Below, in pieces: positions 3,605-51,201 of a stretch of 51,201 bases of DNA (positions within the stretch are counted from its first letter, which is position 1; every line of letters starts with the position of its first letter). The DNA comes from Octopus bimaculoides (Eukaryota). Where the stretch lies: assembly GCF_001194135.2 (NCBI RefSeq), contig NC_068985.1, positions 11,698,211 to 11,749,411 on the forward strand, read 5' to 3'. The translations under genes and the position numbers were made by a program. Under the pieces are notes generated by a model. That model was not told the DNA's origin. It ran no database searches and saw only the letters and a list, made by a program, of their open reading frames with translations.

Positions 3605-4042
3605 CACACACACATACAAACACACATACATAAACAGGCATACACATATATATATATATATATACATACATATATAAACACACACACATATACATACATA
3701 CATATACATATACATATACGTATATAGCAACACACACATATATACACTCACATTTATGTATTGTTTGCGTCGATATAGTTGAAAAAATTTGAGACGTGAA
3801 ATTGAAATTTTGACTTTTTATCGGTAGAATTCAAACAATAGATGAATCTATAATAGCGTATGTATGTATGTATGTATGTATGTATGTATCTATCTATCTA
3901 TCTATCTATCTATATATATNNNNNNNNNNNNNNNNNNNNNNNNNNNNNNNNNNNNNNNNNNNNNNNNNNNNNNNNNNNNNNNNNNNNNNNNNNNNNNNNN
4001 NNNNNNNNNNNNNNNNNNNNNNNNNNNNNNNNNNNNNNNNNN

Positions 4043-6030: not shown

Positions 6031-6284
6031 CGTTTTGATAGTGCAATATCATTGAGTATCACACAATTTACTCATTGTATCACAGCGTTTGCACCATGTA
6101 AAACTCCATTATCACCACGAGATATAAATTGATCGGGTATCAACAGATCTATTATTTCTATAAAATCTACTGAACATTCGGGAACGGTGGACCTAAATGA
6201 ATACAATAAAATATACTAGAACTGAGGTCAATTCTTAGAAATGTACAAAGAGCAAAGAAGCCTTTCCTGTATAATATTTATATA

Positions 6285-6833
6285 GGCGTAGGAATGGCTG
6301 TGTAGTAAGAAGCTTGCTTACGAACCACATGGTTCCGGGTTCACTCCCACTGCGTGGCACCTTGGGCAAGTGTCTCCTACTATAGCCTCAGGCCAACCAA
6401 AGCCTTGTGAGTGAATTTGGTAGACGGAAACTGAAAGAAGCCCGTCGTATATATANNNNNNNNNNNNNNNNNNNNNNNNNNNNNNNNNNNNNNNNNNNNN
6501 NNNNNNNNNNNNNNNNNNNNNNNNNNNNNNNNNNNNNNNNNNNNNNNNNNNNNNNNNNNNNNNNNNNNNNNNNNNNNNNNNNNNNNNNNNNNNNNNNNNN
6601 NATATATATGTATGTATGTGTGTATATGTTTGTGCGTCTGTGTTTGCCCCCCCCCACATCATTTAACAACCGATGAAGGTGTGTTTACGTCCCCGTAGCG
6701 TAGCTGTTCGGTAAGAGAGAACGATAGAATAAGTACTAGGCTTACAAAGAATAAGTCCTGGTGTCGATTTGCTCGACTAAATAGGCGGTGCTCCAGCATG
6801 GCCACAGTCAAATGACTGAAACAAGTAAAAAAG
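6285..6833 (+). mobile_element. tRNA-derived SINE family A, full length, internal microsatellite spans an N-gap
   Basis: Head ggaatggctgtgtagtaag...ggttccgggttcactccc; body ccttgggcaagtgtc..gaaactgaaagaagcccgtcg; tail ggcggtgctccagcatggcc.cagtcaaatgactgaaacaagt; several homologous copies in the window. Confidence 0.92.
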
Positions 6834-8470
6834 TATGTGCATAGCTAAAGAACTAAGAAAAAAAGGAATATGATTGCTTTTCAAAATGAAGATTTCGAAG
6901 AATAAGACGATCATTTATGTTATGAAAATTCTTCCTCTATGTGCGTCTAGCTTATTTTCACAACTTAATTAAAAGACTGAAGATTCATAGAAATTAAGAA
7001 AAAGATATACACAAAATGGAAGTGCACACACCCACCACATTCACATACACACACGCACACACACAATCACATACACACATTCACACATTCACATACACAC
7101 ACGCACACACACAATCATGCAAATACGCACAGATCTAAGAACATACATATATATGCAAACGTAAACAGTAAGTTAAACATTGCAAGCGATAAATAGATCA
7201 TATTTCAAGGATGGATGTGTTATACAATTTTATTTTTCTGCGACCGATGTTATTTCGACTTCGTTCTTATTTTTGTAGAGCGAATCGTATCAGCTGCATT
7301 ATTTAGTCGAAGACATTTCATTTAAAATAATGTACGATATTAAGAAAATACATCTGCATCGTTATTTTCCCTAATCATCCTAGCTGTTATCATTGACATT
7401 GTTTTTCTAAAAAGACACAACGTTGAAACACACGTAAGGAACAAATGTTATGTAAATCGTAATCAGTAATACAACAAAATGTGGTAATAATGAAACCAAA
7501 TGACTATACAGGACGTTGATAATCTATAAGGCGGTCAAAACTGAACAGCAGCAGCCGTCTGTAGACACAAGATGAACAGTATGTAAATAAACATGTAATA
7601 TAATCCAGATCAGAAGACAGAGGTTTTAACACATTTTTAATGGCGTGTCATTAAAGACGTGTTAAAATCTTTCTTTGTCTTTTTCTTTGGATTATGTTCT
7701 GTACTAAACCCACGCAACAGATTTACCATTGTGAAACCAAATTTTCTTTATCCGAAGAATTCTAATATTAGGCTGGAATCCGTCAGTGTAAATAGCCTAA
7801 AGCTCAGATTGAATGCTGAATTGGAAACACTCGATCTCTTCACCATCACAGGACATTACATATGTGTATGTGTGTATATGTGTGTGTGTGTGTGTTTACG
7901 TCTGTGGGGGCGTGTATGTATATACATAGTTGGTAACCCACCCGCCACTTGCTAACTATAACCTTCCATCTGATCCATCTTGAAGCAGATTATCAAATCG
8001 AATTGATCCCCATTTTTTTTTTTTTTCTTCTCAGCTCTAGTCGGAATCCCATTTTTTATCTTTTGATTTCTTATTTGATTAGCCAAATGTTTGTGTTTCA
8101 TTTGTGGTTTGTTCTGATATCTCGTTTTACAAGATCGCTGTCGGCAGAGCATCTGTTTTGGCAACCGAGTTTAAATTCTTTGAAGATATTCAGACCAGCA
8201 GAAATTCCAGCTATATTTTTCACAATTCAATGGCAGACGTTTATGGAGACGGATTGAAAAACATTATATAACGTCATGAAAATCGCTAAGAACAACATAT
8301 ATGTACAGACACACACGCACAAACACACAAACCACACACAAGCATATAGGCACATATGTAGACACGCATATATGTATGCACACAAACATAAAAACATACG
8401 TATATACATACATATATGTGGGTGCATATATATATATATATATATACATTTATGACTACCTCACAAGTAT

Positions 8471-8850: not shown

Positions 8851-9130
8851 ATATATATGTATATTGTGCTCCTTCTAGCTAAGACTAGGGATCTCATCAG
8901 ACGAATGAGATGGAAGGCCTTCTTCCACGATAACCAGACATATAGAAACGACTCAAGTGTTCTCTCCCTTTTTTCAGCGCATCACACTCTATACCACTTC
9001 ATACTAAAACTATCCGCCTATGGATATAATAATAGATTCCTTTATATTTTCTGTCTCCGATGAAGGGAAGTACTAGATCTTCCCAGAAACAGCTGTAAGA
9101 CTCTATCCATAAAATACTTCTCCAACCTTA
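8851..9130 (+). mobile_element. Penelope-like element fragment (N-terminal ORF piece plus HHR-bearing terminus)
   Basis: Translation KTRDLIRRMRWKAFFH resembles the RRxRWKAFF motif of Penelope ORF N-termini; an HHR motif follows at 9053-9101. Confidence 0.6.
9053..9101 (+). ncRNA. Minimal type I hammerhead ribozyme motif (core U4C variant)
   Basis: Stem I gtct/agac; core ccgatga; stem II gggaag/cttccc; GAAA; palindromic stem III acagctgt; GUA cleavage triplet. Confidence 0.7.
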
Positions 9131-9555: not shown

Positions 9556-9719
9556 CCGATGCTGGTGTGTTTACGTCCTCGTAACTTAGCGGTTTCGGCA
9601 AAAGAGACCGATAGAATAAGTACTAGGGTTATAAAGAATAAGTCGTGGGGTCGATTTACTCGACTAAAGGCGGTGCACCAGCATGGCCGCAGTCAAATGA
9701 CTAAAACAAGTGAAAGAGA
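9556..9719 (+). mobile_element. SINE family A, 3' half (5' part probably in the N-gap)
   Basis: ccgatgctggtgtgtttacgtc...taaaggcggtgcaccagcatggccgcagtcaaatgact matches the family A tail. Confidence 0.9.
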
Positions 9720-10168
9720 TGCTCGATTGAAATATACAACTACAGTCCCAGTGTGAAGAACATTAGCACTAGTAAGCGTCACCAAGGGCCCACTCCTAGG
9801 TGTAGAAGAGGAGACTGAAGATAACCAACTTGACAAGACGTGTATGATAAACTCCGTCGTCTGTGCGGTAGAAGTCACAGTAGCGCTTCAAGGAAACCTA
9901 ACTGAAAGAAAAATTACATTAGTTTATGTGAAGTTAAGTTCAAACGATTTTATGCAAACCATCGGTCTTCTTTCCTGCATATCGACAATAGTAAAGCCAC
10001 TGAGTTGGATAGCATGTATAGGGTTTGAAAACCAAATGCACACCACATAAAATCAAGTGAGGAATCATAGAGAGAAAACCATGCTATATATAAATGGGCC
10101 TATGTAATGCAAATAATGAATCACTGAAAGATTGCACATTCTTTTTAGATCTAAGTATTCCAGGACAC

Positions 10169-10507
10169 TCTTTTACTGTTTTACTTGTTTCAGATATTTG
10201 ACTACGGCCATGCTGGAGCACCGCCTTTAGTCGAGGAAATCGACCCCAGGCCTTATTCTTTGTAAGCCTAGTACTTATTCTATGGGTTTCTTTTGCCGAA
10301 CCGCTAAGTTATGGGGACGTAAACACACCAGCATCGGTTATCAAGCGATAGTGGGGGAACAAACACAAACACACAAACACACACGCACACACATGTATAT
10401 ACATATACATATATACGACGGGCGACTTTCAATTTCTGTCTACCAAATCCACTTACAAGGCTTTCCCCAAGGTACCACGCAGTGGGACAGAACCCGGAAC
10501 CATGTGA
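10169..10507 (-). mobile_element. SINE family A copy with internal deletion
   Basis: Reverse complement of the family A tail and head (ccatgctggagcaccgcctttagtcgag; ccacgcagtgggacagaacccggaaccatgtg). Confidence 0.9.
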
Positions 10508-13887: not shown

Positions 13888-14768
13888 TATGTGTCTCGAC
13901 CATAGTGCACTGATGAATAAAAGATGCAGTTTACTACATAGTTTTTGCTGTATTAATTATGAAACCAGTGGTTTGCTGTTAAGTTAAATGTTTTTAGGAG
14001 GTTAACTTTGAAAAATTGCATTTCCTCGCTTTCGGTAAATATGTGCCTATTTTTGGTAGTTTTGACTTATTTAGTCCCTCTACGCGTGAGGCATTATTAT
14101 ATAGTAATGCCCTTATATAAATTATATATATTTACGGAAAAAAACGATGGGTTTTTTTTTTCCTTATGTGTTTTTTCACGCTGGCTACTTGATAAGTTCT
14201 TATAAAGATTTTATCCTATATTATATTATAAATAATTAGAATATATTCAGTGCTGAATATTATTCTGTAAAAGCACGTGTTGCCGAGATGCAATTTGAAA
14301 AAGCTAGCCTCTTTCACGGATATATAAGGATGAACAGAAGTCATCGTACTGTGTTGGGTACATCGGGGTATGTTGATTTTTGTTTATTCTTTATGTGTCT
14401 CGACCATACGTGCACTGATGAATAAAAGATGCAGCTTACTACATAGTTTTTGCTGTATTAATTATGAAACCAGTGGTTTGCCGTTAAGTTAAATGGTTTT
14501 AGGAGGTTAACTTTGAAAAATTGCATTTCTTCGCTTTCGGTAAATATGTGCTTATTTTTAGTAGTTTTGACTTATTTAGTCCCTCTAAGCGTGAGGCATT
14601 ATTATATAGTAATGCCCTTATATAAATTATATATATTTACGGAAAAAAACGATGGTCTTTTTTTTCCTTATGGGTTTTTTTTCCTTATGGGTTTTTTTCA
14701 CGCTGGCTACTTGCTAAATTCTTATAAAGATTTTATCCTATATTATATTATATTATATTATATTATAT
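13888..14768 (+). repeat. Direct duplication of about 345 bp with period about 504 bp, running into a 1 kb gap
   Basis: tatgtgtctcgaccat...attttatcctatattatatta occurs at 13888-14230 and again from 14392; the duplicated ORFs 14008 and 14513 share MKNCISSLSVNMCLFL. Confidence 0.92.
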
Positions 14769-16266
14769 NNNNNNNNNNNNNNNNNNNNNNNNNNNNNNNN
14801 NNNNNNNNNNNNNNNNNNNNNNNNNNNNNNNNNNNNNNNNNNNNNNNNNNNNNNNNNNNNNNNNNNNNNNNNNNNNNNNNNNNNNNNNNNNNNNNNNNNN
14901 NNNNNNNNNNNNNNNNNNNNNNNNNNNNNNNNNNNNNNNNNNNNNNNNNNNNNNNNNNNNNNNNNNNNNNNNNNNNNNNNNNNNNNNNNNNNNNNNNNNN
15001 NNNNNNNNNNNNNNNNNNNNNNNNNNNNNNNNNNNNNNNNNNNNNNNNNNNNNNNNNNNNNNNNNNNNNNNNNNNNNNNNNNNNNNNNNNNNNNNNNNNN
15101 NNNNNNNNNNNNNNNNNNNNNNNNNNNNNNNNNNNNNNNNNNNNNNNNNNNNNNNNNNNNNNNNNNNNNNNNNNNNNNNNNNNNNNNNNNNNNNNNNNNN
15201 NNNNNNNNNNNNNNNNNNNNNNNNNNNNNNNNNNNNNNNNNNNNNNNNNNNNNNNNNNNNNNNNNNNNNNNNNNNNNNNNNNNNNNNNNNNNNNNNNNNN
15301 NNNNNNNNNNNNNNNNNNNNNNNNNNNNNNNNNNNNNNNNNNNNNNNNNNNNNNNNNNNNNNNNNNNNNNNNNNNNNNNNNNNNNNNNNNNNNNNNNNNN
15401 NNNNNNNNNNNNNNNNNNNNNNNNNNNNNNNNNNNNNNNNNNNNNNNNNNNNNNNNNNNNNNNNNNNNNNNNNNNNNNNNNNNNNNNNNNNNNNNNNNNN
15501 NNNNNNNNNNNNNNNNNNNNNNNNNNNNNNNNNNNNNNNNNNNNNNNNNNNNNNNNNNNNNNNNNNNNNNNNNNNNNNNNNNNNNNNNNNNNNNNNNNNN
15601 NNNNNNNNNNNNNNNNNNNNNNNNNNNNNNNNNNNNNNNNNNNNNNNNNNNNNNNNNNNNNNNNNNNNNNNNNNNNNNNNNNNNNNNNNNNNNNNNNNNN
15701 NNNNNNNNNNNNNNNNNNNNNNNNNNNNNNNNNNNNNNNNNNNNNNNNNNNNNNNNNNNNNNNNNAAAAAAAAAAAAAAAAAAAAAAAAGAAAGCAGCTA
15801 AATTTGTTTCGTGCCATACTTTACAGTTTTCTGTCTATATGTACGGGTAAATGAAGCAATCACGATGAATGAATGTGAATAATGACAATATATATGCAAA
15901 ATGTGTGCAATAGAATGAGATCTAGGCTTCTGCATGTTTACTTTTACCAAGACAAAAGAAGAAAAAAAAATTCTGAGAGGCAAATTGGCTGAGCTTGTTC
16001 TTTGTCATTCATTAAGATATGTTATTTCTAAGTTGTCATCCTCATTTTCATGTGTTGATTTTATATATGAGATTTTCAAACTCAATTTGTTTCGAAGTTT
16101 CCTTGATACTGAGGTTATAATTCTTGTGTTTGATTCAAGGTACATGATCATTGATAAATTGATGCACATAAATTAATCGAAATTTTTAAGCTGAACATTC
16201 TCTCTATGTTCCCATTAACTGTAGTCCATTATAATCTGCTAGTATTTGTACCTGCTGCATGATTAA

Positions 16267-16646
16267 CTCTTTTACTCTTCTACTTGTTTCAGTCATTTGA
16301 CTGCGGCGATGCTGGAGCACCGCCTGTAGTCGAGCAAATCGACCCCAGGACTTATTCTTAGTAAGGCTAGTACTTATTCTATGGGTCTCTTTTGCCGAAC
16401 CACTAAGTTACGGGACGTAAACACACAACCATCGGTTGTCAAGCGATGTTGGGGGGACAAACATAAACATATATATATACATATCTACGACGGGCTTCTT
16501 TCAGTTTCCGTCTACCAAATCCACTCGAAAGGCTTTGGTCGACCCGAGGCTACAGTAGAAGACACTTGCCCAAGGTGCCACGCAGTGGGAATGAACCCAG
16601 AATCATGTGGTAAGGAAGCTACTTACCACACAGCCACTCCTGCGCC
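16267..16646 (-). mobile_element. SINE family A, full length
   Basis: Complete reverse complement from the tail (cttgtttcagtcatttgactgcgg) to the head (cttaccacacagccactcctgcgcc). Confidence 0.93.
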
Positions 16647-17639
16647 TAAATTTGACGAAAAAAAAAAACAAACTCTAATGTCTATCTGACTATTGTTCGG
16701 AGAATCATATTTTGTTGGATTTCTCATGGTTATGTACTGCGACAGCAATGTCAGCATATGGGAAAACGTAGTGCACATTTCACGGGATAATGTCGTTAGA
16801 CAATCTAATGCCATCCCTGAGCAGAGAGACCAAATCTATAATTAAAGATACTGCAGCTATAACTATTAAAAGCTACTGCAGTTATATCTGAGTATTTGTT
16901 TTTTTACCAGTTATAGTATATTACAAATTTAGTAATGCGTCTATATATCGGTCCATATGTTTATATACGACTCAAAGAAAAAGTAAATATTAGCCTCATT
17001 ACCTGACCTTCGAAAATTAACAGCTAACCGTCCCTGAAATTATTTTCTCTCGTCTGAATTAAGGAAGGATACATGTGGTAGTACATGCGTACACAAAATG
17101 GGATTGTCAAAACTGGCAGATGTATGATCATAAGGCTGACATGAGGATAAACAACGGCAATACAAGCAGCAACGGCAAAATATCACAAAATAGCACAAAC
17201 GACAACAGCGATTTGGAGAAAACAAAGCAAATTTAACAATAAATACATATAATACACGTAAAAGAAAAAAAAATAGTAAATTCTAGCTGTATCATAAGTA
17301 AGAAACATTTTAAAGCGTTTTCAACTTTTAACACCATTAAACAATTGGAACTAACAATATTTGAATAATGATAAGAGTGTCACCAGCAATGTGCAAGTAT
17401 CCTGGCCGAGACATAAATAAATATAGAAATTTTAAAGAATTAGGATGGAAAAAAAATACTAGTAAAAACTTAATATAATTATATATATACGTTACAGTAA
17501 ACTTGAAGAAAATCCGCAAGGATTCTATTATTTAAAGATATGATTCTCAACAATGGTACCAAAGAGAATACGAAGTAAGTATGCCCTGACGCACAAACAT
17601 ACATGCACACATACATATACTCACAAACACATAGATACA

Positions 17640-18352: not shown

Positions 18353-18599
18353 TGTCCCAACAACATTCCACATACAGACAACAATACCAACCACATCATC
18401 CACACCACTCCCCAAAATACCACCCACATCAACACCCAAACCTCTCACAACCATAACAACAGAAATGGGCACAACACAAGAACTACCCCCACCACAATCA
18501 CTACCACCAATAACAACTATATTAACCATAACGATAATAACAGTCTACACTCTGTCTTCTATAACCCTAACAACAAATCTTATGACATGACGAGGATCT

Positions 18600-20420
18600 A
18601 CACCACAGACTTACCCTTCTAAAAAAAGATTATGTATCCCATCCCCAAATTGACAGTGAAACACAAGCAAAGATCTCCTTAGGTAGAAATGGACTCCGAC
18701 ACATCTTAGACTGGTACTACAAATCCACTAAAATACATACTGAGGAGAGGACCCACCAACCAACTCAGTTCATCTGTTGCCAAAGGTCTACAAAAACTGA
18801 AACAGCGAATTAGTCTGCCTTCCTACGGACAAGTCTGGCAGACTGTCAATAGACAGCCCACAAAACTGTGTCCACACCATGCAACAACACATCAGTAACA
18901 TGAGAGAAATTGCACGACAGGAACATGAAAGAGTGGAAAAACTCATCAATGCACAAATGGGAATGAGGTGCAACACACTCCATTCTATGAAAAGGACTGC
19001 ACACAATTTCCAAGCATCCAGCAATGATGTTCCTACACTATACAGTTTACATAAATACCATAAACCCTACATAAACCCTGACATGGGTCCCCCAACCTGA
19101 CCAGTTTGTGGAGCGAATATGTCCAGCAACTATAGACTGTCCTACTTCCTCTCACAGGTGTTACGAACTCTCATAGAGATGTCTCCAGATGTCTGTGTCC
19201 TCAGTGAAATCAGTACGTGCAACCACTCCAACGACTTCACAGATTGTATAGTGGGTAGTATGGATGTCATTTCACTCTACCCATCTATAGACATAGATTT
19301 TACTGTGGTGAAATGCATTGGGGTAATCTGTGAGAGTGAAGTAGAGTTCCGTTAGTTCAACACGAGGGAACTGGGCCTCCTCCTTAGACTAAGCTATAAC
19401 AGTGACTATTTAGACGACCATGACCTCAGTAGATTCTACCCCACCAGGTCCCAGAGGGGAATACCAGCTACCATCACCTCAGCAGTGAAGAAAAGAACCG
19501 CAGAGTGCTGGGGTGGCTGGACCGTACCCACCCAAGACCCTGAGAACAACAATCAGGTGAAAGAAATGCTTGCACATGCAATAGGGGCCAGTGTAAGAAC
19601 AACCTTGAAGAACCACATAGTAAATTTTAACAAAAACTATACACGCAGGTTCAAGGTGCAGTCATTGGTTTTTGTGTAGCTGTAGATGTGGCCGGCCTCT
19701 TCATGACCTGGTGGGACAGAAAACTTAAGCAATCCTAAGCAGAACAATCCATAACTCTTCTACTCTACAGAAGGCATGTAGATGTCATTAATATCCTAGT
19801 TAAGACCAACTCTAATAACGGTAATGTAGAAACTGAGTGGAACATGATGGAGAGCATCCAGCAAGTAGCTAACTCCATTCACCAAAGTGTCAAGGTAACT
19901 ATAGATTACCCCAGTAGGCACCCCAGCAATAGACTCCATGTCCTTGATACTGAGCTTTGGTTAGAGACTGTAAACAACAGAGTGCAGCTCGTCCACTACT
20001 GTAACATGAAACCCATAGCTTCTAAATATGTTGTTCACAAGAACTTAGCTTTGTCACAAAGCATGAAAATTAACATACTGATAGCAGACTTAGTTAGGAT
20101 AATGAACAACATGTCCCCACTATGCAAACCATATGAAACGCAAAAACATGTACAGAACTCCATGCACCACATGCAGTTCTCTGGATATGATCAGAAGGAT
20201 AGTGTTCGAGTACACAAGGGTGCTAGAAAGAAATTAGATAACATGATATGTAATGATGCCAGTGGTACCTACTCTAGATATAGAAACAAAGACTGGAATA
20301 GGATACAAAGAGCTTGTGACAAAGCAAACAGGGTGCTTACGTGGTATAAAACCGAAAAATATCAACGAATGATGTTTGTAGAGGCCACAGTCCATGCAGA
20401 ACTAGTCCAGGTACACACAC
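18600..20420 (+). mobile_element. Penelope-like element reverse transcriptase, decayed (stops and frameshifts), no GIY-YIG domain seen
   Basis: Motifs GLQKLK, PTDKSG, PTLYSLHKYHK..(R)PVC, SMDVISLYPSI, NHIVNFN, LYRRHVD, IDYPS..LHVLD, HY..KP.ASK, KINIL..LVRI..N.S appear in Penelope RT order. Confidence 0.88.
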
Positions 20421-22298
20421 ATACCTAAAAACAAACACGGACACGCAAACACATGAATATGCAGAATACATACATACAAATGTACACACATACATACATA
20501 TATACATATGCACACACATACATGCATACACACATGCATGCATACATACATACACGTGTATGCACACACACGTTGACCCACACACATGCGCGCAAACTAA
20601 AAGAAAAATGAACGCACGAAGTGTGATAACTGTTAGAGTCAACAGCTATCGAAAAGGTTGCAACACGCAACGAAGATTTTAGAGAAATAAAGAATGAAAT
20701 GAGTGGAAATTTTACCGGTGAGTGTGTTAAATTATAAGGCACTAAAAGAGAATGACTCTCCCCAGACACAACAGAGTATGCTTCAACACACGAACTCACA
20801 TAAAGTATCTTTCAGACCAAAACCAAAAACGAAATATATATATATATATTATATGCAAGTACACAAATATACACGCATACAAAACTATATACATACCTAC
20901 ATACATACATACTTACATTCATTCATACAAACATACATTCATACATTCATAAATACATACATACATGCATACATTATCTATACCAGTGAGTACGCATTCA
21001 TAAAAACCGGCCTCTCTAATTGTATGTGACGCGAAAACCAAATATAAATTTATATTTAAGTTGCAAGCTTTCATATGTAGATATACACACGTATGAAATA
21101 CACGAATTTGCTTACAGATAAAAGAAGTGAATAGCTACATAAACACACAACAACATACACATATGCACACATACAAGCAGATATGATAACATGTATTTTT
21201 ACGTCTATACCATAAAGAGTTGGCACGATTAATGTATTTTGATGTTTATCATTATATATATTCTAAAAACGAGTTCTTGCTAATATCAGATATGCGTATC
21301 TATTCTTTGAGCTCGTGTTGTACATACAATTACGCGCATGTAAATAAAAGTATATACTTGCATGCATGTATATATATGAATATGTGTATTTGTATCCATA
21401 AACCATTTGACCCAAAAGGAATACATGAGACATATTGTGCTAAAAATGAATCAAATTTTAAACAAAAGCAAATATTTCTAAATACGCCAAATAAGACTGT
21501 ATATATATATATATNNNNNNNNNNNNNNNNNNNNNNNNNNNNNNNNNNNNNNNNNNNNNNNNNNNNNNNNNNNNNNNNNNNNNNNNNNNNNNNNNNNNNN
21601 NNNNNNNNNNNNNNNNNNNNNNNNNNNNNNNNNNNNNNNNNNNNNNNNNNNNNNNNNNNNNNNNNNNNNNNNNNNNNNNNNNNNNNNNNNNNNNNNNNNN
21701 NNNNNNNNNNNNNNNNNNNNNNNNNNNNNNNNNNNNNNNNNNNNNNNNNNNNNNNNNNNNNNNNNNNNNNNNNNNNNNNNNNNNNNNNNNNNNNNNNNNN
21801 NNNNNNNNNNNNNNNNNNNNNNNNNNNNNNNNNNNNNNNNNNNNNNNNNNNNNNNNNNNNNNNNNNNNNNNNNNNNNNNNNNNNNNNNNNNNNNNNNNNN
21901 NNNNNNNNNNNNNNNNNNNNNNNNNNNNNNNNNNNNNNNNNNNNNNNNNNNNNNNNNNNNNNNNNNNNNNNNNNNNNNNNNNNNNNNNNNNNNNNNNNNN
22001 NNNNNNNNNNNNNNNNNNNNNNNNNNNNNNNNNNNNNNNNNNNNNNNNNNNNNNNNNNNNNNNNNNNNNNNNNNNNNNNNNNNNNNNNNNNNNNNNNNNN
22101 NNNNNNNNNNNNNNNNNNNNNNNNNNNNNNNNNNNNNNNNNNNNNNNNNNNNNNNNNNNNNNNNNNNNNNNNNNNNNNNNNNNNNNNNNNNNNNNNNNNN
22201 NNNNNNNNNNNNNNNNNNNNNNNNNNNNNNNNNNNNNNNNNNNNNNNNNNNNNNNNNNNNNAATAATAATGATAATAATAAGAATAATAATAACGATG

Positions 22299-23833: not shown

Positions 23834-24005
23834 TCGAAAAATACCTTAGGAATGAGAACCCAGGTTCGAAATTTCCCCACGACACCTGATGAAGGCTGGA
23901 GGGTATATCAGCCGAAACGTTGTGTTAACAACAAACAAAATGAGGACAACTATCCGTCGAATGTAAATAATGTACAGAATTCCTCATCTCTTAAATATAG
24001 AACTG
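23722..24005 (+). mobile_element. tRNA-headed SINE-like element with (AAT)n linker and Penelope-like HHR tail
   Basis: A-box-like tggtggagtgatta, B-box gagttcgattcc (23772-23783), (aat)n 23802-23831, then the HHR motif at 23881-23926. Confidence 0.75.
23881..23926 (+). ncRNA. Minimal type I hammerhead ribozyme motif
   Basis: Stem I gacac/gtgtt; ctgatga plus extra A; stem II ggctg/cagcc; GAAA; palindromic ACGT stem III; GUU triplet. Confidence 0.8.
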
Positions 24006-24955: not shown

Positions 24956-26140
24956 ATTTGAATTACTTTTTGCAAATCAATTTTACCAGGTAAATGTAAA
25001 AATTCTATCCTGCCGAAACGCACCTCACTTGTTCGTCGCATATTTAAACAGTTGTGTTTGACAAGAAGATATGTGTTCTATACCTGGAACGTCAAGCGAT
25101 CGCAGAACGACTCTGCTGCCATTTCATACTGCTAATTCTACAATTATATATTGGATACACCGCTACACATTTCCATAAGATTGCTTTAATATAAAAGTAC
25201 GTAAATACATACAAAGAAACACACATACATATATAGCAAAATATAGATAGATATATAAAGAGAAAGAAAGAGAGAGATAGAGAGAGAGAAAGAAAGAGAG
25301 AGAGAGAGATAAAGAGAGAGAGAGAGAGAGAGAGAGGGGGGAGATAGAGACTGAGTGGTTACGCGGACAGAGGTCTGTCTTTGAACAATCAGATTAAAAG
25401 TCGTAGCAACCATCTCTTTATGTTGCTTGATTGACGAGAACTAAGAGCTATTTTTCTATTTCGCGACAATATTGCAGGTGTGTGAATTCTTTAGTAAGAT
25501 CTAATCGAGGAGATTTATAATCAAATTCTTTCCAGCCTTGACTTTTCTACCAATTCTTTTGCTAAACAAATTTATGCGACTGTGTTCTGTTTGAAGACAT
25601 TAAGCTTTCATTTGAAGATGGCTTCCGTTTCGTAGAGTATTGCGCGTTGATTCCTGTAGGTATGAGTGAAAAAGTTTGTTCCAGAATAACACACTACGTG
25701 AGATTTTGTTTCCAAAGTGTGTGTGTGTGTGTATGAGAAGAATGTTTGGATTTGTATGCAAGTATGTGTGTATTTGTGTGCGATTGTGTATGTGTGAACG
25801 TCATGTTTGTTTGCATATTTGTGTGTGCCTGTGTGTGTATGCCTGTGTGTTTGTTTGCCATCTGAAATTGGAAGAAACGCCGGTAAGCAAATGCGATCGG
25901 TTTGATTGGTGGATACAGCAACATGAAATTTCAGAAAATTAGCTACTTAATCTTCATTTATCTTCCACGATGTGAGACCGATAAATGTCTTTCTAGATCG
26001 CTGGCGGTACTAACAAGCAATTTTTGGTTGACATCTTTAATTGTTTCTCTCTGTTCTAAATATGTACTCTTACATTTTTCGTAATACAGATCAGTTTTCT
26101 ACATATTATAAAAGTAACACTTTAACATACTTCAACAGTA

Positions 26141-26530
26141 GTCGCAGGAGTGGCTGTGTGGTAAGAAGTTTGCTTACCAACCACATGGTTCCGAGTTCAG
26201 TCCTACTGCGTGGCATCTTCGGCAGAAGTCGTCTACTGTAGCTTCGGACCGACCAAAACCTTGTGGGAGGATTTAGTAGATGGAAATTGAAAGAAGCCTG
26301 GCGAATACGTGTATATATATATATGTGTGTATATATATGTATATATATATATGTATGCAATTGTGTGTCTGTATGTGTTCCCCACCATTGATTGGCAACT
26401 GATGTTGATGTGTTTACGCCCCCGTAAGTTAGGCTTACAAAGAATAAGTTCTGGGTCGATTTGTTCTACTAAAGGCGGGGCTCCAACATGGCCGCAGTCA
26501 AATGAGTGAAACAAGCAAAAGAATACAGAA
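26141..26530 (+). mobile_element. SINE family A copy with small deletion
   Basis: gcaggagtggctgtgtggtaag...ggttccgagttcagtcc...taaaggcggggctccaacatggccgcagtcaaatg. Confidence 0.9.
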
Positions 26531-27648: not shown

Positions 27649-27696
27649 GTCTCTGATGAAGGGATATCCATAATATCCCAGAAACAGCTGTAAGAC
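27649..27696 (+). ncRNA. Minimal type I hammerhead ribozyme motif, best-preserved copy
   Basis: gtct-ctgatga-a-gggata-tccataa-tatccc-a-gaaa-cagctg-ta-agac: intact core, 6-bp stem II, palindromic stem III, GUA triplet. Confidence 0.85.
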
Positions 27697-30129: not shown

Positions 30130-31402
30130 TTCTTTTTATGTTTCTCTCACTTAAATGTTGATATTTATTCTTCAATCTATGTGAGCCATAACGGTTTTCT
30201 TCTTCTTTTTTTTTTGTTTGTTTTTGCTAGCCCCAGTTCAAACGTTCCAGGTTCCAGTTTAAGTCTTACTAATCCCTTTTTTTTTGGCAATTGTCTTCTC
30301 CAACTCTAAATTCTTGTTGTAAAAAACCACTGTTCTGATATTTTTAATATTCTACTTTTCTAGCTACCTTTCCTTCTATCCTCGCTCTATCCTTCTGGTT
30401 TATCATCGTTTACCACCAATTTATCCACTTCTCCCTTCTTGTTAAATTTTTTTCATGCTCTGTGTCTTGGGTTCGATTCTCAGTTTCGTCTTTTTCGGTT
30501 TCCTTTTCGTTCTCTGTCTTTTTCTTTCCCCCTCTCTCTTTTCTTGGGGGGTCTTTGGCGGCGATTCAGTCCGCATACGTTTTCTATCTGTTCCTTCTAA
30601 ACTTTCCTCGCTCTCCACAATCTCCTCCTGCTTTTCCTCTACCTCTTCTTGTTCGACCTCTACCATTTGCTCTTCACAGATCTCTGTTTCTACCACTTGA
30701 ACATCTCTACGGGGAAACACCACCTGTATGTGTCCCCTACTTCCACATCTATAGCATACGGGTGGCTTCCCCTCTACCACAACCCTCAGTCGGGTGTCAT
30801 CGGGGAGCACCAACTCCTCTGCGACGTTATGCAGGTCAGGCAGTGTTATATGGGTTAGAATTTCCAACCCAAAACCCCACCAGTTGATCTCCTTAGACCT
30901 CTCCACTTTTATGATTTTCACCTCGTCTTTGCAATTATAGATTACTGCTGCCACCAGCCAATTCTAAATCTATTTCCAGTGGTACTTTTTCGATTCTTAT
31001 CCTTGCGGCTCTTCTGCCGCAATATACTGGCAAAAGAGCCCACTTCTCCGTTCTTAGAGGTATGGTAGAATACCTATTCGCATCTGCCTCGTTCTTAAAA
31101 TACACCTTTACAGTTCCGTATTTCTTTCCTCCCGTGTAGAACACTATTTCTTCCTTAATTCCGCTTCAACTTCCGCTATATCAACTTTTCTTTACTGTTA
31201 CGTTTAGTGTCTTATACGTTATAATTCTTTTTTCAGCGTTTCCCATCACTTCTTTGGGAGGACTAAGCCGCAGGCAGTCCCCCTCCTTCTTTAACAACTT
31301 AAAGTGTTTCTTTATATTTGCAATTTCCACTTTAACTTCCTTCATCTCCATGTCGTCGGCCGGCCGACACTTGCCAACCGCTGCCGCGTAACTAGTAGTC
31401 AT
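30130..31402 (-). mobile_element. L1/Tx1-like ORF1 (gag-like) remnant with zinc knuckle, frameshifted, no adjacent ORF2 seen
   Basis: MTTSYAAAVG start (ATG 31402-31400), RIRIEKVPLEID, LVLPDDTRLRVVVEGKPPVCYRCGSRGHIQVVFP (CX2CX4H with the last C lost), acidic then basic C-terminus. Confidence 0.75.
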
Positions 31403-37430: not shown

Positions 37431-37777
37431 CAGAAGTGGCTGTGTGGTAAGTAGCTCGCTTACCAACCACATGGTTCCGGGTTCATTCCCGCTGCGTTAC
37501 ACCTTGGACAAGTGTCTTCCACTATAGCCTCGGGCCGACCAAAGCCTTGTGAGTGGATTTGATAGACGGAAACTGAAAGAAGCCCATTTCTGTTGTACCT
37601 ATATTTCAAAGGGGCCAGCCATGTCACACTCTGCGTCACGCTGAATCTCCTTGGGAACTACATTAAGGGTACACGTGTCTGTGGAGTGCTCAGCCGCTTG
37701 CACGTTAATTTCACGAGCAAGCTGTTCCGTTGATCGGATCAACTGGAACCCTCCTCGTCGCAACCGACAGAGTGCCA
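37431..37777 (+). mobile_element. Chimeric SINE: family A head joined to tail T
   Basis: Family A sequence runs to gaaactgaaagaagccc (about 37585), then tacctatatttcaaaggggccagcc...gatcggatcaactggaaccc..gagtgcca. Confidence 0.9.
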
Positions 37778-37830: not shown

Positions 37831-38198
37831 TACAAGAAAAGGACAACAAAAACCAAGGCAGGATGAGTATCTCAAATAATTTATAATAATTTAATTAGGG
37901 CAAGGCGAAGTTTTACATCTGTTTGTAGTATAGCCAAAGTGATAAGCTGGCATGTCCGTACACTGGGTAGACAAGGCGAGTACGTATGAACGTTTTAGAC
38001 AGGGAAATTCTTAGTTTATACGGAATAGAAGAATAAAGAGTAAAAGTAGAGAGAATAGAGACATGAGAATAAAAACAGGAGAATAAAAACAGTAAACTCT
38101 ATTCTTTGTGAACTTCATTCTCCTGCCTGTATCCTATTTACTTTTATTCTTTATTTTTCTATTTTATTCCTTATAAAACTTTCATACATATTCACCTG

Positions 38199-38274
38199 GT
38201 CTCTGATGACGGAGTACCCAATGTACGGACATATTAGCTTACCACTTAGGATATCCCAGAAACAGCTGCAAGAC
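38199..38274 (+). ncRNA. Decayed minimal HHR motif of the 27649 family
   Basis: gtct-ctgatga...tatccc-a-gaaa-cagctg-ca-agac; enlarged stem II region and GUA changed to GCA. Confidence 0.6.
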
Positions 38275-38692
38275 TTCAACTTCACCTTAGTCGTATTAAA
38301 TGATTATAAATGACTCGAGATACTCATTCTGCCTTGGATTTTGTTGTTCTTTTCCTCTAATAGATATCTGCTAACACGGAAGCCTAATACGGATCCCTAG
38401 CCCCAGCCTCCGCTATGAAACTGGAACCTAACGATTGACCAATTATAGCACTTACTCGGCGTACCTACTCGTTTAGATCACCAGTGCGCTAAACTTCTCA
38501 TATTCTCACTCGATATATGATTGTATATACATAATAAATATATAAATATATATTTTTGTGTGTATAAATATGCATATATCAAAATGATATGCAATTTAAT
38601 GCAGAAACATTTCAAGCACTGCGCTATAAGATCACAAATGCTCCACAACCGGCATTTACAGGACCCGGAGGTACTGCAATCCTCCGTCTCCT

Positions 38693-38727
38693 GTTTCTGA
38701 CGAAGAGCTTTGCTCGAAATGTAAAAC
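38693..38727 (+). ncRNA. Minimal type I HHR motif of a different family
   Basis: gttt-ctgacga-a-gagc-ttt-gctc-gaaa-tg-ta-aaac; stem III ATGT is consistent with CpG decay of the ACGT palindrome. Confidence 0.7.
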
Positions 38728-45581: not shown

Positions 45582-45852
45582 CAGGCATGGCTGTGTGGTA
45601 AGTAGCTTGCTTACCAACCACATGGTTCCGGGTTCAGTCCCACCGCGTTCCACCTTGGGCAAGTGTCTTCTGCTATAGCCTCGGCCCGACAAAAGCCTTG
45701 TGAGTGGATTTGGTTGAGGGAACTGAAAGAAGCCCGTCCTATATATANNNNNNNNNNNNNNNNNNNNNNNNNNNNNNNNNNNNNNNNNNNNNNNNNNNNN
45801 NNNNNNNNNNNNNNNNNNNNNNNNNNNNNNNNNNNNNNNNNNNNNNNNNNNN

Positions 45853-45887
<35 letters not shown>

Positions 45888-46158
45888 ATATGTATGTATG
45901 TATATATGTACGTATGTATGTATGTACGTATGTATGTATGTATGTATTTGTGTAACTGTGTCTGTTCCCCCACTATCACTTGACAACCGATGCTGGTGTG
46001 TTTACCGTCCTGTAACTTAGCGGTTCGGCAAAAAGAGATCGACAGAAAAAGTACTTGACCTACAAAGAATAAGCCCTGGGATCGGTTTGCTCGACGAAAC
46101 GGCGGTGCTCCAGCATGGCCACAATCAAATGATTGAAACAAATAAAAGAATAAAAGAA
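45582..46158 (+). mobile_element. SINE family A, full length, internal microsatellite spans an N-gap
   Basis: ggcatggctgtgtggtaagtagcttgc..ggttcagtccc through ggcggtgctccagcatggcc..aataaaagaataaaag. Confidence 0.93.
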
Positions 46159-50508: not shown

Positions 50509-50713
50509 ATTATTCGGTTGCCATAATAAAACTCCGAGTTTCGGAGTTAGCTCTTTTGTTTTGTCGTAATTACGGCGAACTTCATGGTAATTTCATTTTG
50601 TTTAACGGTCATTTTCAAAGCATTTTTGTTTTGGCTAAATAACTGACGAAATGCGGAGCAGGTTTCCGCCCCGACATCCAAAACTCGGAATTTAATTATG
50701 GCAACCGAATAAT
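50509..50713. mobile_element. Mariner-type MITE, about 200 bp
   Basis: TIRs tattcggttgccataat.aaa.tccgagttt / aaactcgga.ttt.attatggcaaccgaata with TA at both ends. Confidence 0.85.
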
Positions 50714-50818
50714 TGTCACATATTATTTTACAGATACATTCCTCCATTTACATAATATCGAGGTTTCATTTATTCTTTTGTTGTCATACTATTACCATTA
50801 ATATGTATGTATATATAT

Positions 50819-51201
50819 ATAGAGTTATTAATATTTCTAAGTCTCTCTAAAGGAGACTACGGCAGCGGTACTGGAAATTAATAGTTATCGCCAAGCCAAC
50901 ATGGCAGTCCCAAAATTAGGACGAAAGCTGCCGTGAATTAGCTCCAAGAAGCCATCGCCTCTAGCTAGCTATGTGACACACGAACCTGTGTCCTTTATAA
51001 CCTTCGAACAGGGGAGGTCAGCAGTGTCCCCCTGCTGGTTTGGCATCTGCAGACTAGACTAGTTTCAGGGTGTTGCCCCTTGTCAATGCAGAGTAGCCAA
51101 GCCTTAGCCAGGCGGCGCTGCTGACTATCTGCTCGAAGGTTATTTATCTAATTTCAGTGGAATCTATCCACTGGTTTTCAGAAATAGAGTTATTAATATT
51201 T
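50819..51201 (-). mobile_element. Retrozyme-like 365-nt structured unit bounded by an 18-nt (or longer) direct repeat
   Basis: atagagttattaatattt at 50819-50836 and 51184-51201; the GC-richer interior folds into consecutive hairpins; a type I HHR-like motif sits at 51046-51092 on the minus strand. Confidence 0.6.
51046..51092 (-). ncRNA. Decayed type I hammerhead ribozyme with extended stem I
   Basis: Minus strand tctgca-ttgacaa-gggg-caaca-ccct-gaaa-cta-gtc-tag-tc-tgcaga; all three stems present and a GUC triplet; the core differs from CUGANGA at two positions. Confidence 0.65.

What the first reader, a model, noticed from the sequence alone, without database searches (positions are those of the whole stretch)
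50819..51201. Retrozyme-like unit: 365-nt fully hairpinned repeat carrying a type I hammerhead
Seen: an 18-nt direct repeat 365 nt apart (the window ends inside the second copy). Between them almost every base falls in a hairpin: agtctc/gagact (50840-50858), acggcagc/gctgccgt (50859-50934), gacaca/tgtgtc (near 50976-50992), a long interrupted stem 50997-51143, and cagtgga/tccactg (51155-51173). At the apex of the long stem the minus strand reads stem I UCUGCA/UGCAGA, core UUGACAA, stem II GGGG/CCCU, GAAA, stem III ACUA/UAGU, GUC. Known: metazoan non-LTR retrozymes (cnidarians, Mytilus, axolotl) are about 170-400-nt non-coding repeats with a type I HHR that produce circular RNAs. Inference: this is a cephalopod retrozyme monomer. 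This copy is probably inactive (C3U, G8A; two of the three changes fit CpG decay), so the active form would be the family consensus.
Basis: partly seen in the sequence, partly recalled or inferred. Interest (0 to 1): 0.85.

Follow-up and report, generated by a model that had tools for sequence, protein, structure and literature searches.

The report
Hammerhead-ribozyme repeat unit in an octopus-like genome
The last 383 bases of the window hold a compact, heavily self-paired, non-coding unit carrying a credible hammerhead self-cleaving RNA motif like those of animal "retrozymes" and Penelope-like retroelements; this is a likely new example of a known kind, but it could not be shown to be tandem, multi-copy or active.

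Summary
An exact 18-nt direct repeat lies 365 nt apart, with the window ending on the last base of the second copy. All five hairpins are present. On the minus strand, 51092..51046 forms a complete type I hammerhead with cleavage predicted between 51052 and 51051.

The motif is unlikely to be chance. A covariance model built only from four experimentally validated retrozyme hammerheads (coral, mussel, two axolotl) ranks it first in the window at 25.5 bits, E about 3e-5. The next hit scores 15 bits. A descriptor search finds it alone, with about 0.0025 hits per shuffled window.

Its architecture matches the coral retrozyme ribozyme: a 6-bp helix I, a 4-bp helix II with a 5-nt loop, and a palindromic helix III.

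C3U and G8A together keep the C3-G8 tertiary pair as U3-A8, a natural covariation already reported in Penelope-like-element hammerheads.

The only homologue found for a nearby gag-like ORF is from Octopus bimaculoides, which supports a cephalopod origin.

Tandem arrangement, copy number, expression and cleavage could not be tested. No other copy lies in the window and no relative was found in any searchable collection. Rfam gives no hit.

Verdict: probable new member of a known kind, of moderate interest.

The parts
50819..50836 (.). Direct repeat, copy 1 (ATAGAGTTATTAATATTT), directly after a (TA)n/(TATG)n microsatellite
51184..51201 (.). Direct repeat, copy 2, 18/18 identical and cut by the window end. 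It could be the start of a second tandem unit, terminal redundancy from rolling-circle reverse transcription, or a target-site duplication
50837..51183 (-). Unit interior: 347 nt, GC 0.49 against 0.31 for the window, no ORF longer than 29 aa from a start codon, multibranched fold
51046..51092 (-). Type I hammerhead motif. Helix I is UCUGCA/UGCAGA (6 bp). The core is UUGACAA (U3-A8). Helix II is GGGG-CAACA-CCCU (4 bp, G10.1.U11.1). Then G12-A13-A14. Helix III is ACUA-GUC-UAGU (starts at A15.1, ends at U16.1; near-palindromic). C17 follows
51051..51052 (-). Predicted self-cleavage site (C17 at 51052 | U1.1 at 51051). This would also be the circRNA junction
   Evidence: inferred from the motif parse; not shown experimentally
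50997..51143 (-). Long interrupted hairpin that extends helix I beyond an internal loop ('loop 1') and carries the hammerhead at its tip
50840..50992 (-). Hairpin domain inside the multiloop: 50840-50858, 50859-50934 (itself branched) and 50976-50992. In the MFE there is also a hairpin at about 50937-50970
51155..51173 (-). Terminal hairpin CAGTGGA/TCCACTG

Best explanation
The unit is a copy of a non-autonomous, hammerhead-bearing retroelement of the metazoan non-LTR retrozyme type, sitting in a cephalopod genome. It is either a monomer or the first unit of a tandem array.

Proposed mechanism:
1. Read-through transcription of the minus strand yields an RNA in which the long hairpin 51143..50997 presents a type I hammerhead at its tip.
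2. The ribozyme cuts between C17 (51052) and U1.1 (51051). It may act alone, or as a double hammerhead formed through the near-palindromic helix III of two neighbouring units.
3. [quoted passage not shown]
4. A host RNA ligase circularises this RNA.
5. The compact circle is reverse-transcribed by the machinery of an autonomous element, most likely a Penelope-like element, and re-inserted as monomers or multimers.

Shown here: the motif, its fit to validated retrozyme ribozymes, the fold, the direct repeat, and the non-coding, GC-distinct nature of the unit. Inferred: transcription, cleavage, circularisation and mobilisation.

The U3-A8 core is read as a compensated, possibly functional variant rather than as decay.
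For: (1) Covariance model R1 was built only from the coral, mussel and two axolotl retrozyme hammerheads of PMC7229834 Suppl. Table 2. It finds 51046-51092(-) as the top hit: 25.5 bits, E 2.6e-5, full length, all 13 pairs standard. The next hit scores 15 bits and the noise is at or below 12.4 bits.

(2) An RNAmotif-style descriptor accepting C3-G8 or U3-A8 finds only this locus. One of 400 window shuffles has any hit. There were no hits in 20,000 shuffles of the element and none in 82 Mb of Markov simulation.

(3) The architecture equals the 'canonical metazoan' type: helix I 6 bp, helix II 4 bp, short palindromic helix III (PMC4209133). It is nearly superimposable on coral Amil224, whose helix I strands likewise contain CUGCA and UGCAG, and which has a 4-bp helix II with a 5-nt loop, GAAAC, a palindromic helix III and GUC|U.

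(4) U3-A8 preserves the C3-G8 pair and is a documented natural covariation.

(5) Unit features fit the retrozyme definition: 365 nt, GC 0.49, non-coding, circle z = -8.3.

(6) Two copies cofold into a double hammerhead at -35.7 kcal/mol, against 2 x -12.7 for monomers.

(7) The window is enriched in hammerhead motifs. A relaxed descriptor gives 5 loci against 0.06 per shuffle, and one of them belongs to a 3-copy family with the PLE-type 'minimal' architecture. This matches the reported co-occurrence of retrozymes and PLEs.

(8) The octopus affinity of a neighbouring ORF fits an invertebrate host.
Against: - No second unit is visible and there is no other copy in 51 kb.
- No relative was found in protein collections via six-frame translations, nor in metagenome or viral contigs. 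These collections probably hold little cephalopod DNA, so this is weak negative evidence.
- Rfam release 15 gives no hit, even at E <= 10.
- The strict core CUGANGA that the retrozyme authors used as a filter is not met, and 10.1-11.1 is G.U.
- As a monomer, the hammerhead fold (-9.3 kcal/mol) lies 3.4 kcal/mol above the MFE of the isolated 47-mer.
- Scaling the model's E-value to a 2-3 Gb genome gives about one chance hit of this score genome-wide, so selection by the first-stage scan matters.
- Strong folding is not unique to this unit in the window.
Confidence: 0.5

Rival explanations
1. The unit is the terminal repeat (pLTR) or a solo or truncated end of an autonomous Penelope-like element, not a separate non-autonomous retrozyme. 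The hammerhead would then process the PLE transcript, and the RT-endonuclease ORF would lie beyond the window end or have been lost.
For: PLE pLTRs always carry type I hammerheads. The U3-A8 covariation was described precisely in PLE (Cercyon) hammerheads. PLE-type minimal hammerheads occur elsewhere in the window. Some PLE clades insert preferentially at microsatellites, and the unit abuts a (TA)n tract. Retrozymes and pLTRs are reported to be homologous, so the boundary between the two is soft.
Against: The motif has the canonical retrozyme architecture: 6-bp helix I, 4-bp helix II and a real helix III. PLE 'minimal' motifs instead have a 4-5-bp helix I, a 6-8-bp helix II, an extra unpaired base and little or no helix III. 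There is no ORF or RT-like sequence on the low-coordinate side within the window. A 365-nt period fits retrozymes; PLE tandems repeat at about 3 kb.
Confidence: 0.2
2. The unit is an unrelated structured repeat (a SINE, a hairpin-rich non-autonomous element or a local duplication) inserted with an 18-bp target-site duplication, and it resembles a hammerhead only by chance. The U3/A8 'core' would then have no meaning.
For: It is a single copy in the window. Rfam is silent. The core departs from consensus at two positions, and the 10.1-11.1 pair at the base of helix II is a G.U wobble. Genome-wide, about one model hit of this score and some tens of loose descriptor hits are expected by chance. 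The finding was selected by a reader looking for such motifs. Hairpin-rich DNA supplies stems for free.
Against: The match to a model built from independent validated ribozymes is full length with 13/13 standard pairs, and it scores 10 bits above the next hit. The two core changes fall exactly on the one pair of core positions that can compensate each other. The motif sits at the tip of a hairpin that extends helix I past an internal loop, as in type I ribozymes of circRNAs. No tRNA-like sequence was found and there are no terminal inverted repeats. An 18-bp TSD is long for DNA transposons.
Confidence: 0.25
3. The unit is a satellite-type tandem DNA repeat with no retrotransposition, whose transcripts self-cleave, as first described for newt satellite 2. 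The 365-nt period would arise by unequal exchange rather than by reverse transcription of a circle.
For: The direct repeat at exactly one period is what a tandem array would show. Hammerhead-bearing satellites are known.
Against: Such satellites are now interpreted as retrozymes. There is no partial unit upstream of 50819, and the array, if there is one, starts cleanly next to a microsatellite.
Confidence: 0.05

Closest known systems
Metazoan non-LTR retrozymes (Cervera and de la Pena 2020, PMC7229834), e.g. Acropora millepora Amil224, Mytilus galloprovincialis Mg353, axolotl Rtz331/353
   Same: A unit of 170-400 nt, GC below 50%, non-coding, with a highly self-paired predicted circle. A type I hammerhead with a 6-bp helix I, a 4-bp helix II with a 5-nt loop, a short palindromic helix III, GAAAC and GUC|U. 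The helix I strands contain CUGCA and UGCAG, as in the coral ribozyme. PLE-type hammerheads co-occur in the same genome region.
   Different: The core is UUGACAA (U3-A8) instead of CUGANGA, and 10.1-11.1 is G.U. Tandem arrangement, copy number, circRNA and cleavage are not shown. There is no sequence similarity outside the ribozyme, which is expected because these repeats are species-specific.
[quoted passage not shown]
   Same: Type I topology, a palindromic helix III suited to dimer formation, the U3-A8 covariation, and association with retroelements in invertebrates.
   Different: PLE motifs are 'minimal': helix II 6-8 bp with an unpaired base, helix I 4-5 bp, and little or no helix III. 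They flank an RT-GIY-YIG ORF of about 3 kb. Here the helices are canonical and no ORF is adjacent within the window.
Schistosoma Sm-alpha/Sj-alpha SINE-like elements and newt satellite 2 (own knowledge, plus the review PMC6765202)
   Same: Repeats of about 330 nt with one type I hammerhead each, dispersed or tandem, producing self-cleaving transcripts.
   Different: Sm-alpha carries a promoter ahead of the hammerhead (by my own knowledge a tRNA-like pol III promoter). No tRNA-like sequence was detected here.
Plant LTR retrozymes and viroid-like circRNAs
   Same: Hammerhead-processed, compact circular RNA intermediates.
   Different: Those use type III hammerheads and have LTRs, PBS/PPT and 4-bp TSDs, with GC above 55%. 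None of this applies here.

Membership tests
Metazoan non-LTR retrozyme | Type I hammerhead with three helices of canonical size (helix I about 6 bp, helix II about 4 bp, short palindromic helix III) | tested here: met
   Parse. Full-length match with 13/13 standard pairs to a model built from four validated retrozyme ribozymes: 25.5 bits, E 2.6e-5.
Metazoan non-LTR retrozyme | Conserved catalytic centre CUGANGA / GAAAY / RUH, the filter used by the authors (legend S1) | tested here: not met
   GAAAC and GUC are present, but the first box is UUGACAA. The two departures (U3, A8) are the isosteric covariation of the C3-G8 pair known from PLE hammerheads. The letter of the criterion fails; the structural logic may hold.
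Metazoan non-LTR retrozyme | Occurs as tandem repeats (dimers to multimers) of 150-450 bp | tested here: inconclusive
   An 18-nt exact repeat lies one 365-nt period downstream, but the window ends on its last base. Attempts to extend the sequence failed.
Metazoan non-LTR retrozyme | Multi-copy family in the genome | tested here: inconclusive
   There is no second copy in the 51-kb window, and none in the searchable collections. The host genome itself is not searchable with these tools.
Metazoan non-LTR retrozyme | Non-coding, GC below 50% | tested here: met
   GC is 0.487. The longest ORF from a start codon is 29 aa, and the longest stop-free stretch is 51 aa.
Metazoan non-LTR retrozyme | Monomer predicted to form a stable, highly self-paired circle | tested here: met
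   The 365-nt circle has MFE -142.5 kcal/mol, z = -8.3 and 64% of bases paired.
Metazoan non-LTR retrozyme | Self-cleavage, and accumulation as linear and circular RNA in tissues | not testable with these tools
   This needs in vitro transcription assays and RNA data.
Metazoan non-LTR retrozyme | Co-occurrence with PLE-type hammerheads or PLEs in the same genome | tested here: met
   PLE-type minimal motifs lie at 27649-27696, 23881-23926 and 38693-38727, with degenerate relatives at 9053-9125 and 38192-38275. That is 5 loci against 0.06 expected. No PLE reverse transcriptase was confirmed.
Penelope-like element pLTR | Hammerhead-bearing repeat flanking an RT plus GIY-YIG ORF | tested here: inconclusive
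   There is no ORF on the low-coordinate side. The other side lies outside the window.
Penelope-like element pLTR | 'Minimal' hammerhead architecture (long helix II with an unpaired base, short helix I, no real helix III) | tested here: not met
   Helix I is 6 bp, helix II is 4 bp with no extra base, and helix III is 4 bp.
Rfam Hammerhead_1 (RF00163) and other Rfam hammerhead models | Score at or above the gathering threshold | tested here: not met
   There was no match at gathering thresholds on the whole window, and none at E <= 10 on 50700-51201.

The most novel reading that the evidence does not exclude
Cephalopods host an active retrozyme family whose otherwise canonical three-helix type I hammerhead runs on a U3-A8 core. 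This would be a natural, selected exchange of the C3-G8 tertiary pair in a circRNA-producing element. The family would yield abundant 365-nt circular RNAs in octopus tissues and would be mobilised by resident Penelope-like elements.
Probability: 0.25. Interest if true: 0.55.

Novelty: new member of a known kind. Interest (0 to 1): 0.38.

Why it matters
If confirmed, this would extend ribozyme-made circular RNAs (retrozymes) to cephalopods. Neither of the two key retrozyme papers I searched mentions that lineage. It would also give a natural example of the U3-A8 core inside a canonical, retrozyme-type hammerhead rather than a minimal PLE one. That would be useful for understanding how much of the catalytic core can be exchanged. 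In practical terms, descriptor and Rfam screens that insist on CUGANGA would miss such families. It would not change the general picture, because hammerhead-bearing repeats are already known to be widespread in invertebrates, molluscs included.

Tried and rejected
(1) Rfam scan of the whole window at gathering thresholds, and of 50700-51201 at E <= 10: nothing.

(2) Other copies of the unit in the window by blastn with word size 7: none beyond the 18-nt repeat.

(3) Relatives through a concatenated six-frame translation against 5.8 billion proteins: no hit at E <= 10. An exhaustive phmmer of the 50-aa minus-frame stretch against 1.84 billion representatives gave one hit at E 9e-4. It is an unrelated tandem-repeat protein, rejected as chance.

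(4) Exact-pattern scans of metagenome contigs (the hammerhead with degenerate positions 3/8/11.1, then the unit-end/repeat junction) and of viral contigs: zero.

(5) Extending the window through exact look-ups of five window ORFs (three close to the window end, two further upstream): none on record.

(6) tRNA-like or SINE head: ARAGORN found nothing.

(7) MITE reading: the unit has no terminal inverted repeats. The only inverted match at its ends is the AT-rich palindromic repeat itself.

(8) An empty-site paralogue of the upstream flank: none.

(9) Similarity of the unit to published coral and mussel retrozymes outside the ribozyme: none.

(10) A PLE reverse transcriptase in the ORF cluster at 18.6-20.4 kb, which I suspected from motifs recalled from memory: Pfam negative at E <= 1, so this is not claimed.

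(11) CpG decay as the sole explanation of the core changes. It is not excluded for G8A and C11.1U (unit CpG o/e 0.53), but it cannot explain C3U or the fact that positions 3 and 8 changed together.

Full report
**What is there.** The window ends with a discrete element. The 18-mer ATAGAGTTATTAATATTT occurs at 50819-50836 and again, identically, at 51184-51201, which are the last bases of the window. The spacing is 365 nt. The 347 nt between the copies have GC 0.49 against 0.31 for the window. They contain no ORF above 29 aa from a start codon. They lie directly after a (TA)n/(TATG)n microsatellite.

The interior folds far better than its dinucleotide shuffles on both strands, with z = -6.8 and -6.5. 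A 365-nt circle of the minus polarity gives -142.5 kcal/mol, z = -8.3 and 64% paired bases. The fold is a long interrupted hairpin (50997-51143) closing a multiloop of five or six small hairpins.

Folding alone is not distinctive here. Four of 45 other 347-nt segments of the window reach z <= -5.5, and the ones examined carry simple repeats or lie over a neighbouring inverted-repeat element.

**The ribozyme motif.** On the minus strand, 51092..51046 reads UCUGCA-UUGACAA-GGGG-CAACA-CCCU-GAAA-CUA-GUC-UAG-UC-UGCAGA. It parses as follows:
- Helix I is 6 bp.
- The core box is U3 U4 G5 A6 C7 A8 A9.
- Helix II is 4 bp with a 5-nt loop, with G10.1.U11.1 at its base.
- G12 A13 A14 follow.
- Helix III is A15.1-CUA / UAG-U16.1 with a GUC loop.
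- C17 is at 51052 and N1.1 at 51051.
- Helix I continues, past a small internal loop, into the long hairpin. Stems II and III are capped and stem I is the open one, which makes this a type I topology.

**Is it more than chance?** I used three tests.

First, an RNAmotif-style descriptor accepting either C3-G8 or U3-A8 finds this locus and no other in the window. One of 400 dinucleotide shuffles of the window had any hit. None of 20,000 shuffles of the element did. Neither did 82 Mb of first-order Markov sequence with the window's composition.

Second, as an independent test, I took the four ribozymes of the experimentally characterised retrozymes (coral Amil224, mussel Mg353, axolotl Ax353 and Ax330) from Supplementary Table 2 of PMC7229834. 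I aligned them and built a covariance model that does not include the window sequence. Searched with filters off over both strands of the window, it ranks 51046-51092(-) first at 25.5 bits, E 2.6e-5, full length, with every pair standard. The next hit has 15 bits and the rest 12.4 bits or fewer.

Third, the architecture is the one described as canonical for metazoan type I hammerheads: helix I 6 bp, helix II 4 bp, and a short helix III with a palindromic sequence (PMC4209133). It is almost superimposable on the coral retrozyme ribozyme, ACUGCA-CUGAUGA-GGCC-AGAAA-GGCC-GAAA-CAGUACUG-UC-UGCAGU.

Some limits apply. The model's calibration is rough. Scaling its E-value to a 2-3 Gb genome gives about one chance hit of that score genome-wide. 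The locus was selected by a reader looking for this motif. Rfam 15 reports nothing, even at E <= 10 on the 502-nt region.

**The core changes.** In the active fold, C3 and G8 form a Watson-Crick pair (Martick and Scott 2006, confirmed by two further studies, as summarised in PMC3884650). C3U plus G8A gives U3-A8, which keeps that pair.

Exactly this covariation was reported in nature. A U3-A8 core was found in Cercyon Penelope-like elements of Schistosoma mansoni and retrieved about 1,300 further motifs (PMC4209133). Of all pairs of conserved core positions, only this pair can compensate each other. Two independent decay events landing on it in the compensating combination is unlikely. I therefore expect the family consensus, if a family exists, to carry U3-A8 itself.

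The wobble at 10.1-11.1 weakens helix II. However, an axolotl retrozyme ribozyme that was cloned and assayed has a U.U mismatch at the same place.

CpG decay remains a possible source of G8A and C11.1U. The unit's CpG o/e is 0.53 from 11 CpGs, while the window's is about 0.82 once the N runs are removed from the length. CpG decay does not explain C3U.

Whether this copy cleaves can only be settled experimentally.

**Monomer or dimer.** In isolation, the 47-mer's hammerhead fold (-9.3 kcal/mol) lies 3.4 kcal/mol above its MFE. Two copies cofold into a double hammerhead with a 10-bp helix III (one U.U mismatch) at -35.7 kcal/mol, against 2 x -12.7 for monomers. This fits the dimer mode proposed for metazoan type I and PLE hammerheads. 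Invertebrate retrozyme ribozymes with a stable helix III are also reported to cleave as monomers.

**Context.** The window is a gap-ridden, microsatellite-rich eukaryotic draft with 17 N runs and 31% GC. The only homologue found for a gag-like CCHC ORF at 30442-30954(-) is a UniRef protein of Octopus bimaculoides at 63% identity.

The window holds further hammerhead-like motifs. One family, at 27649-27696(+), has degenerate relatives at 9053-9125 and 38192-38275. It shows a canonical CUGAUGA core, a 6-7-bp helix II that differs on both strands between two copies while staying paired, an unpaired base 5' of helix II, a 4-bp helix I and an AGCU-looped helix III. Single minimal motifs lie at 23881-23926(+) and 38693-38727(+).

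With a relaxed descriptor the window has 5 loci against 0.06 per shuffle. These have the minimal architecture described for PLEs. Retrozymes and PLEs are reported to co-occur and to be related. I could not confirm a PLE reverse transcriptase in the window.

**What could not be established.** The defining properties of a retrozyme are tandem repetition, many copies, self-cleavage and circRNA. All are out of reach here.
- There is no other copy in the window.
- Six-frame translations of the unit find nothing in 5.8 billion proteins. An exhaustive search with a 50-aa frame returned only a chance match.
- Exact-pattern scans of metagenome and viral contigs were empty.
- Five attempts to recover the source contig through exact ORF look-ups failed.

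The second 18-mer can therefore be read three ways. It may be the start of a second unit. It may be terminal redundancy from reverse transcription running slightly more than once round a 365-nt circle. Or it may be an 18-bp target-site duplication around a 347-nt monomer. Monomers are common in retrozyme families.

**Verdict.**
- Most likely (about 0.5), this is a retrozyme-type, non-autonomous hammerhead element in an octopus-like genome.
- About 0.25 goes to a chance look-alike in an unrelated structured insertion.
- About 0.05 goes to a non-mobile satellite.

The 'inactive copy' claim should be replaced by 'compensated U3-A8 core, activity unknown'. This is at best a new member of a known kind. 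Its modest special interest is a canonical-architecture hammerhead with the U3-A8 core, in a lineage absent from the retrozyme papers I could search.

Noticed in passing
window 27649-27696 (+); relatives at 9053-9125 (+) and 38192-38275 (+): A small dispersed family with a PLE-type hammerhead: GUCU-CUGAUGA-A-GGGAUAU-CCAUA-AUAUCCC-A-GAAAC-AGCU-GUA|AGAC. It was the second-best hit of the retrozyme model (15 bits, E 0.04). The copy at 9053 has helix II changed on both strands while staying paired (GGGAAG/CUUCCC) but has a U4C core change. The copy at 38192 has helix II split by an insertion and U16.1C.
   Followed up: partly
window 23881-23926 (+) and 38693-38727 (+): Two further single 'minimal' hammerhead motifs with canonical cores (CUGAUGA and CUGACGA), an unpaired A before helix II and a 1-bp helix III with a 2-nt loop. 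Together with the others, this makes 5 loci against 0.06 expected per shuffled window. A sixth-type hit at 3775-3821 (+) is AT-rich and probably chance.
   Followed up: partly
window 50509-50713: A MITE-like element of about 205 bp immediately upstream of the unit. It has 37-nt terminal inverted repeats at 92% identity (CATTATTCGGTTGCCATAAT... / ...ATTATGGCAACCGAATAATTG). It accounts for the strong folding of the neighbouring segment.
   Followed up: partly
window 30442-30954 (-): A 170-aa ORF with a CCHC zinc knuckle (gag-like). Its only database homologue is an Octopus bimaculoides CCHC-type protein (UniRef A0A0L8GKK6, 63% identity), which gives the best clue to the host lineage.
   Followed up: yes
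window 18586-20428 (+): A cluster of frame-shifted open stretches. The last of them (194 aa from its ATG) has three homologues at 41-44% identity in ENA assemblies, one of them on a 1-Mb contig (ERZ25066843). It looked like a decayed reverse transcriptase to me, but Pfam finds nothing at E <= 1.
   Followed up: partly
window 6280-6835, 9556-9718, 10167-10464, 16266-16651, 26139-26525, 37431-37585, 45582-46157: A dispersed repeat family of about 150-400 bp, present in at least seven copies in both orientations at 72-91% identity. It is probably a SINE-like element of this genome.
   Followed up: no
window 13888-14246 and 14392-14768: A local direct duplication of about 370 bp at 90% identity, ending at an N gap.
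   Followed up: no
whole window: There are 17 runs of N (6,970 bases) and more than 90 tandem-repeat rows. This is a short-read draft assembly in which repeats such as a tandem retrozyme array could easily be collapsed or broken.
   Followed up: no
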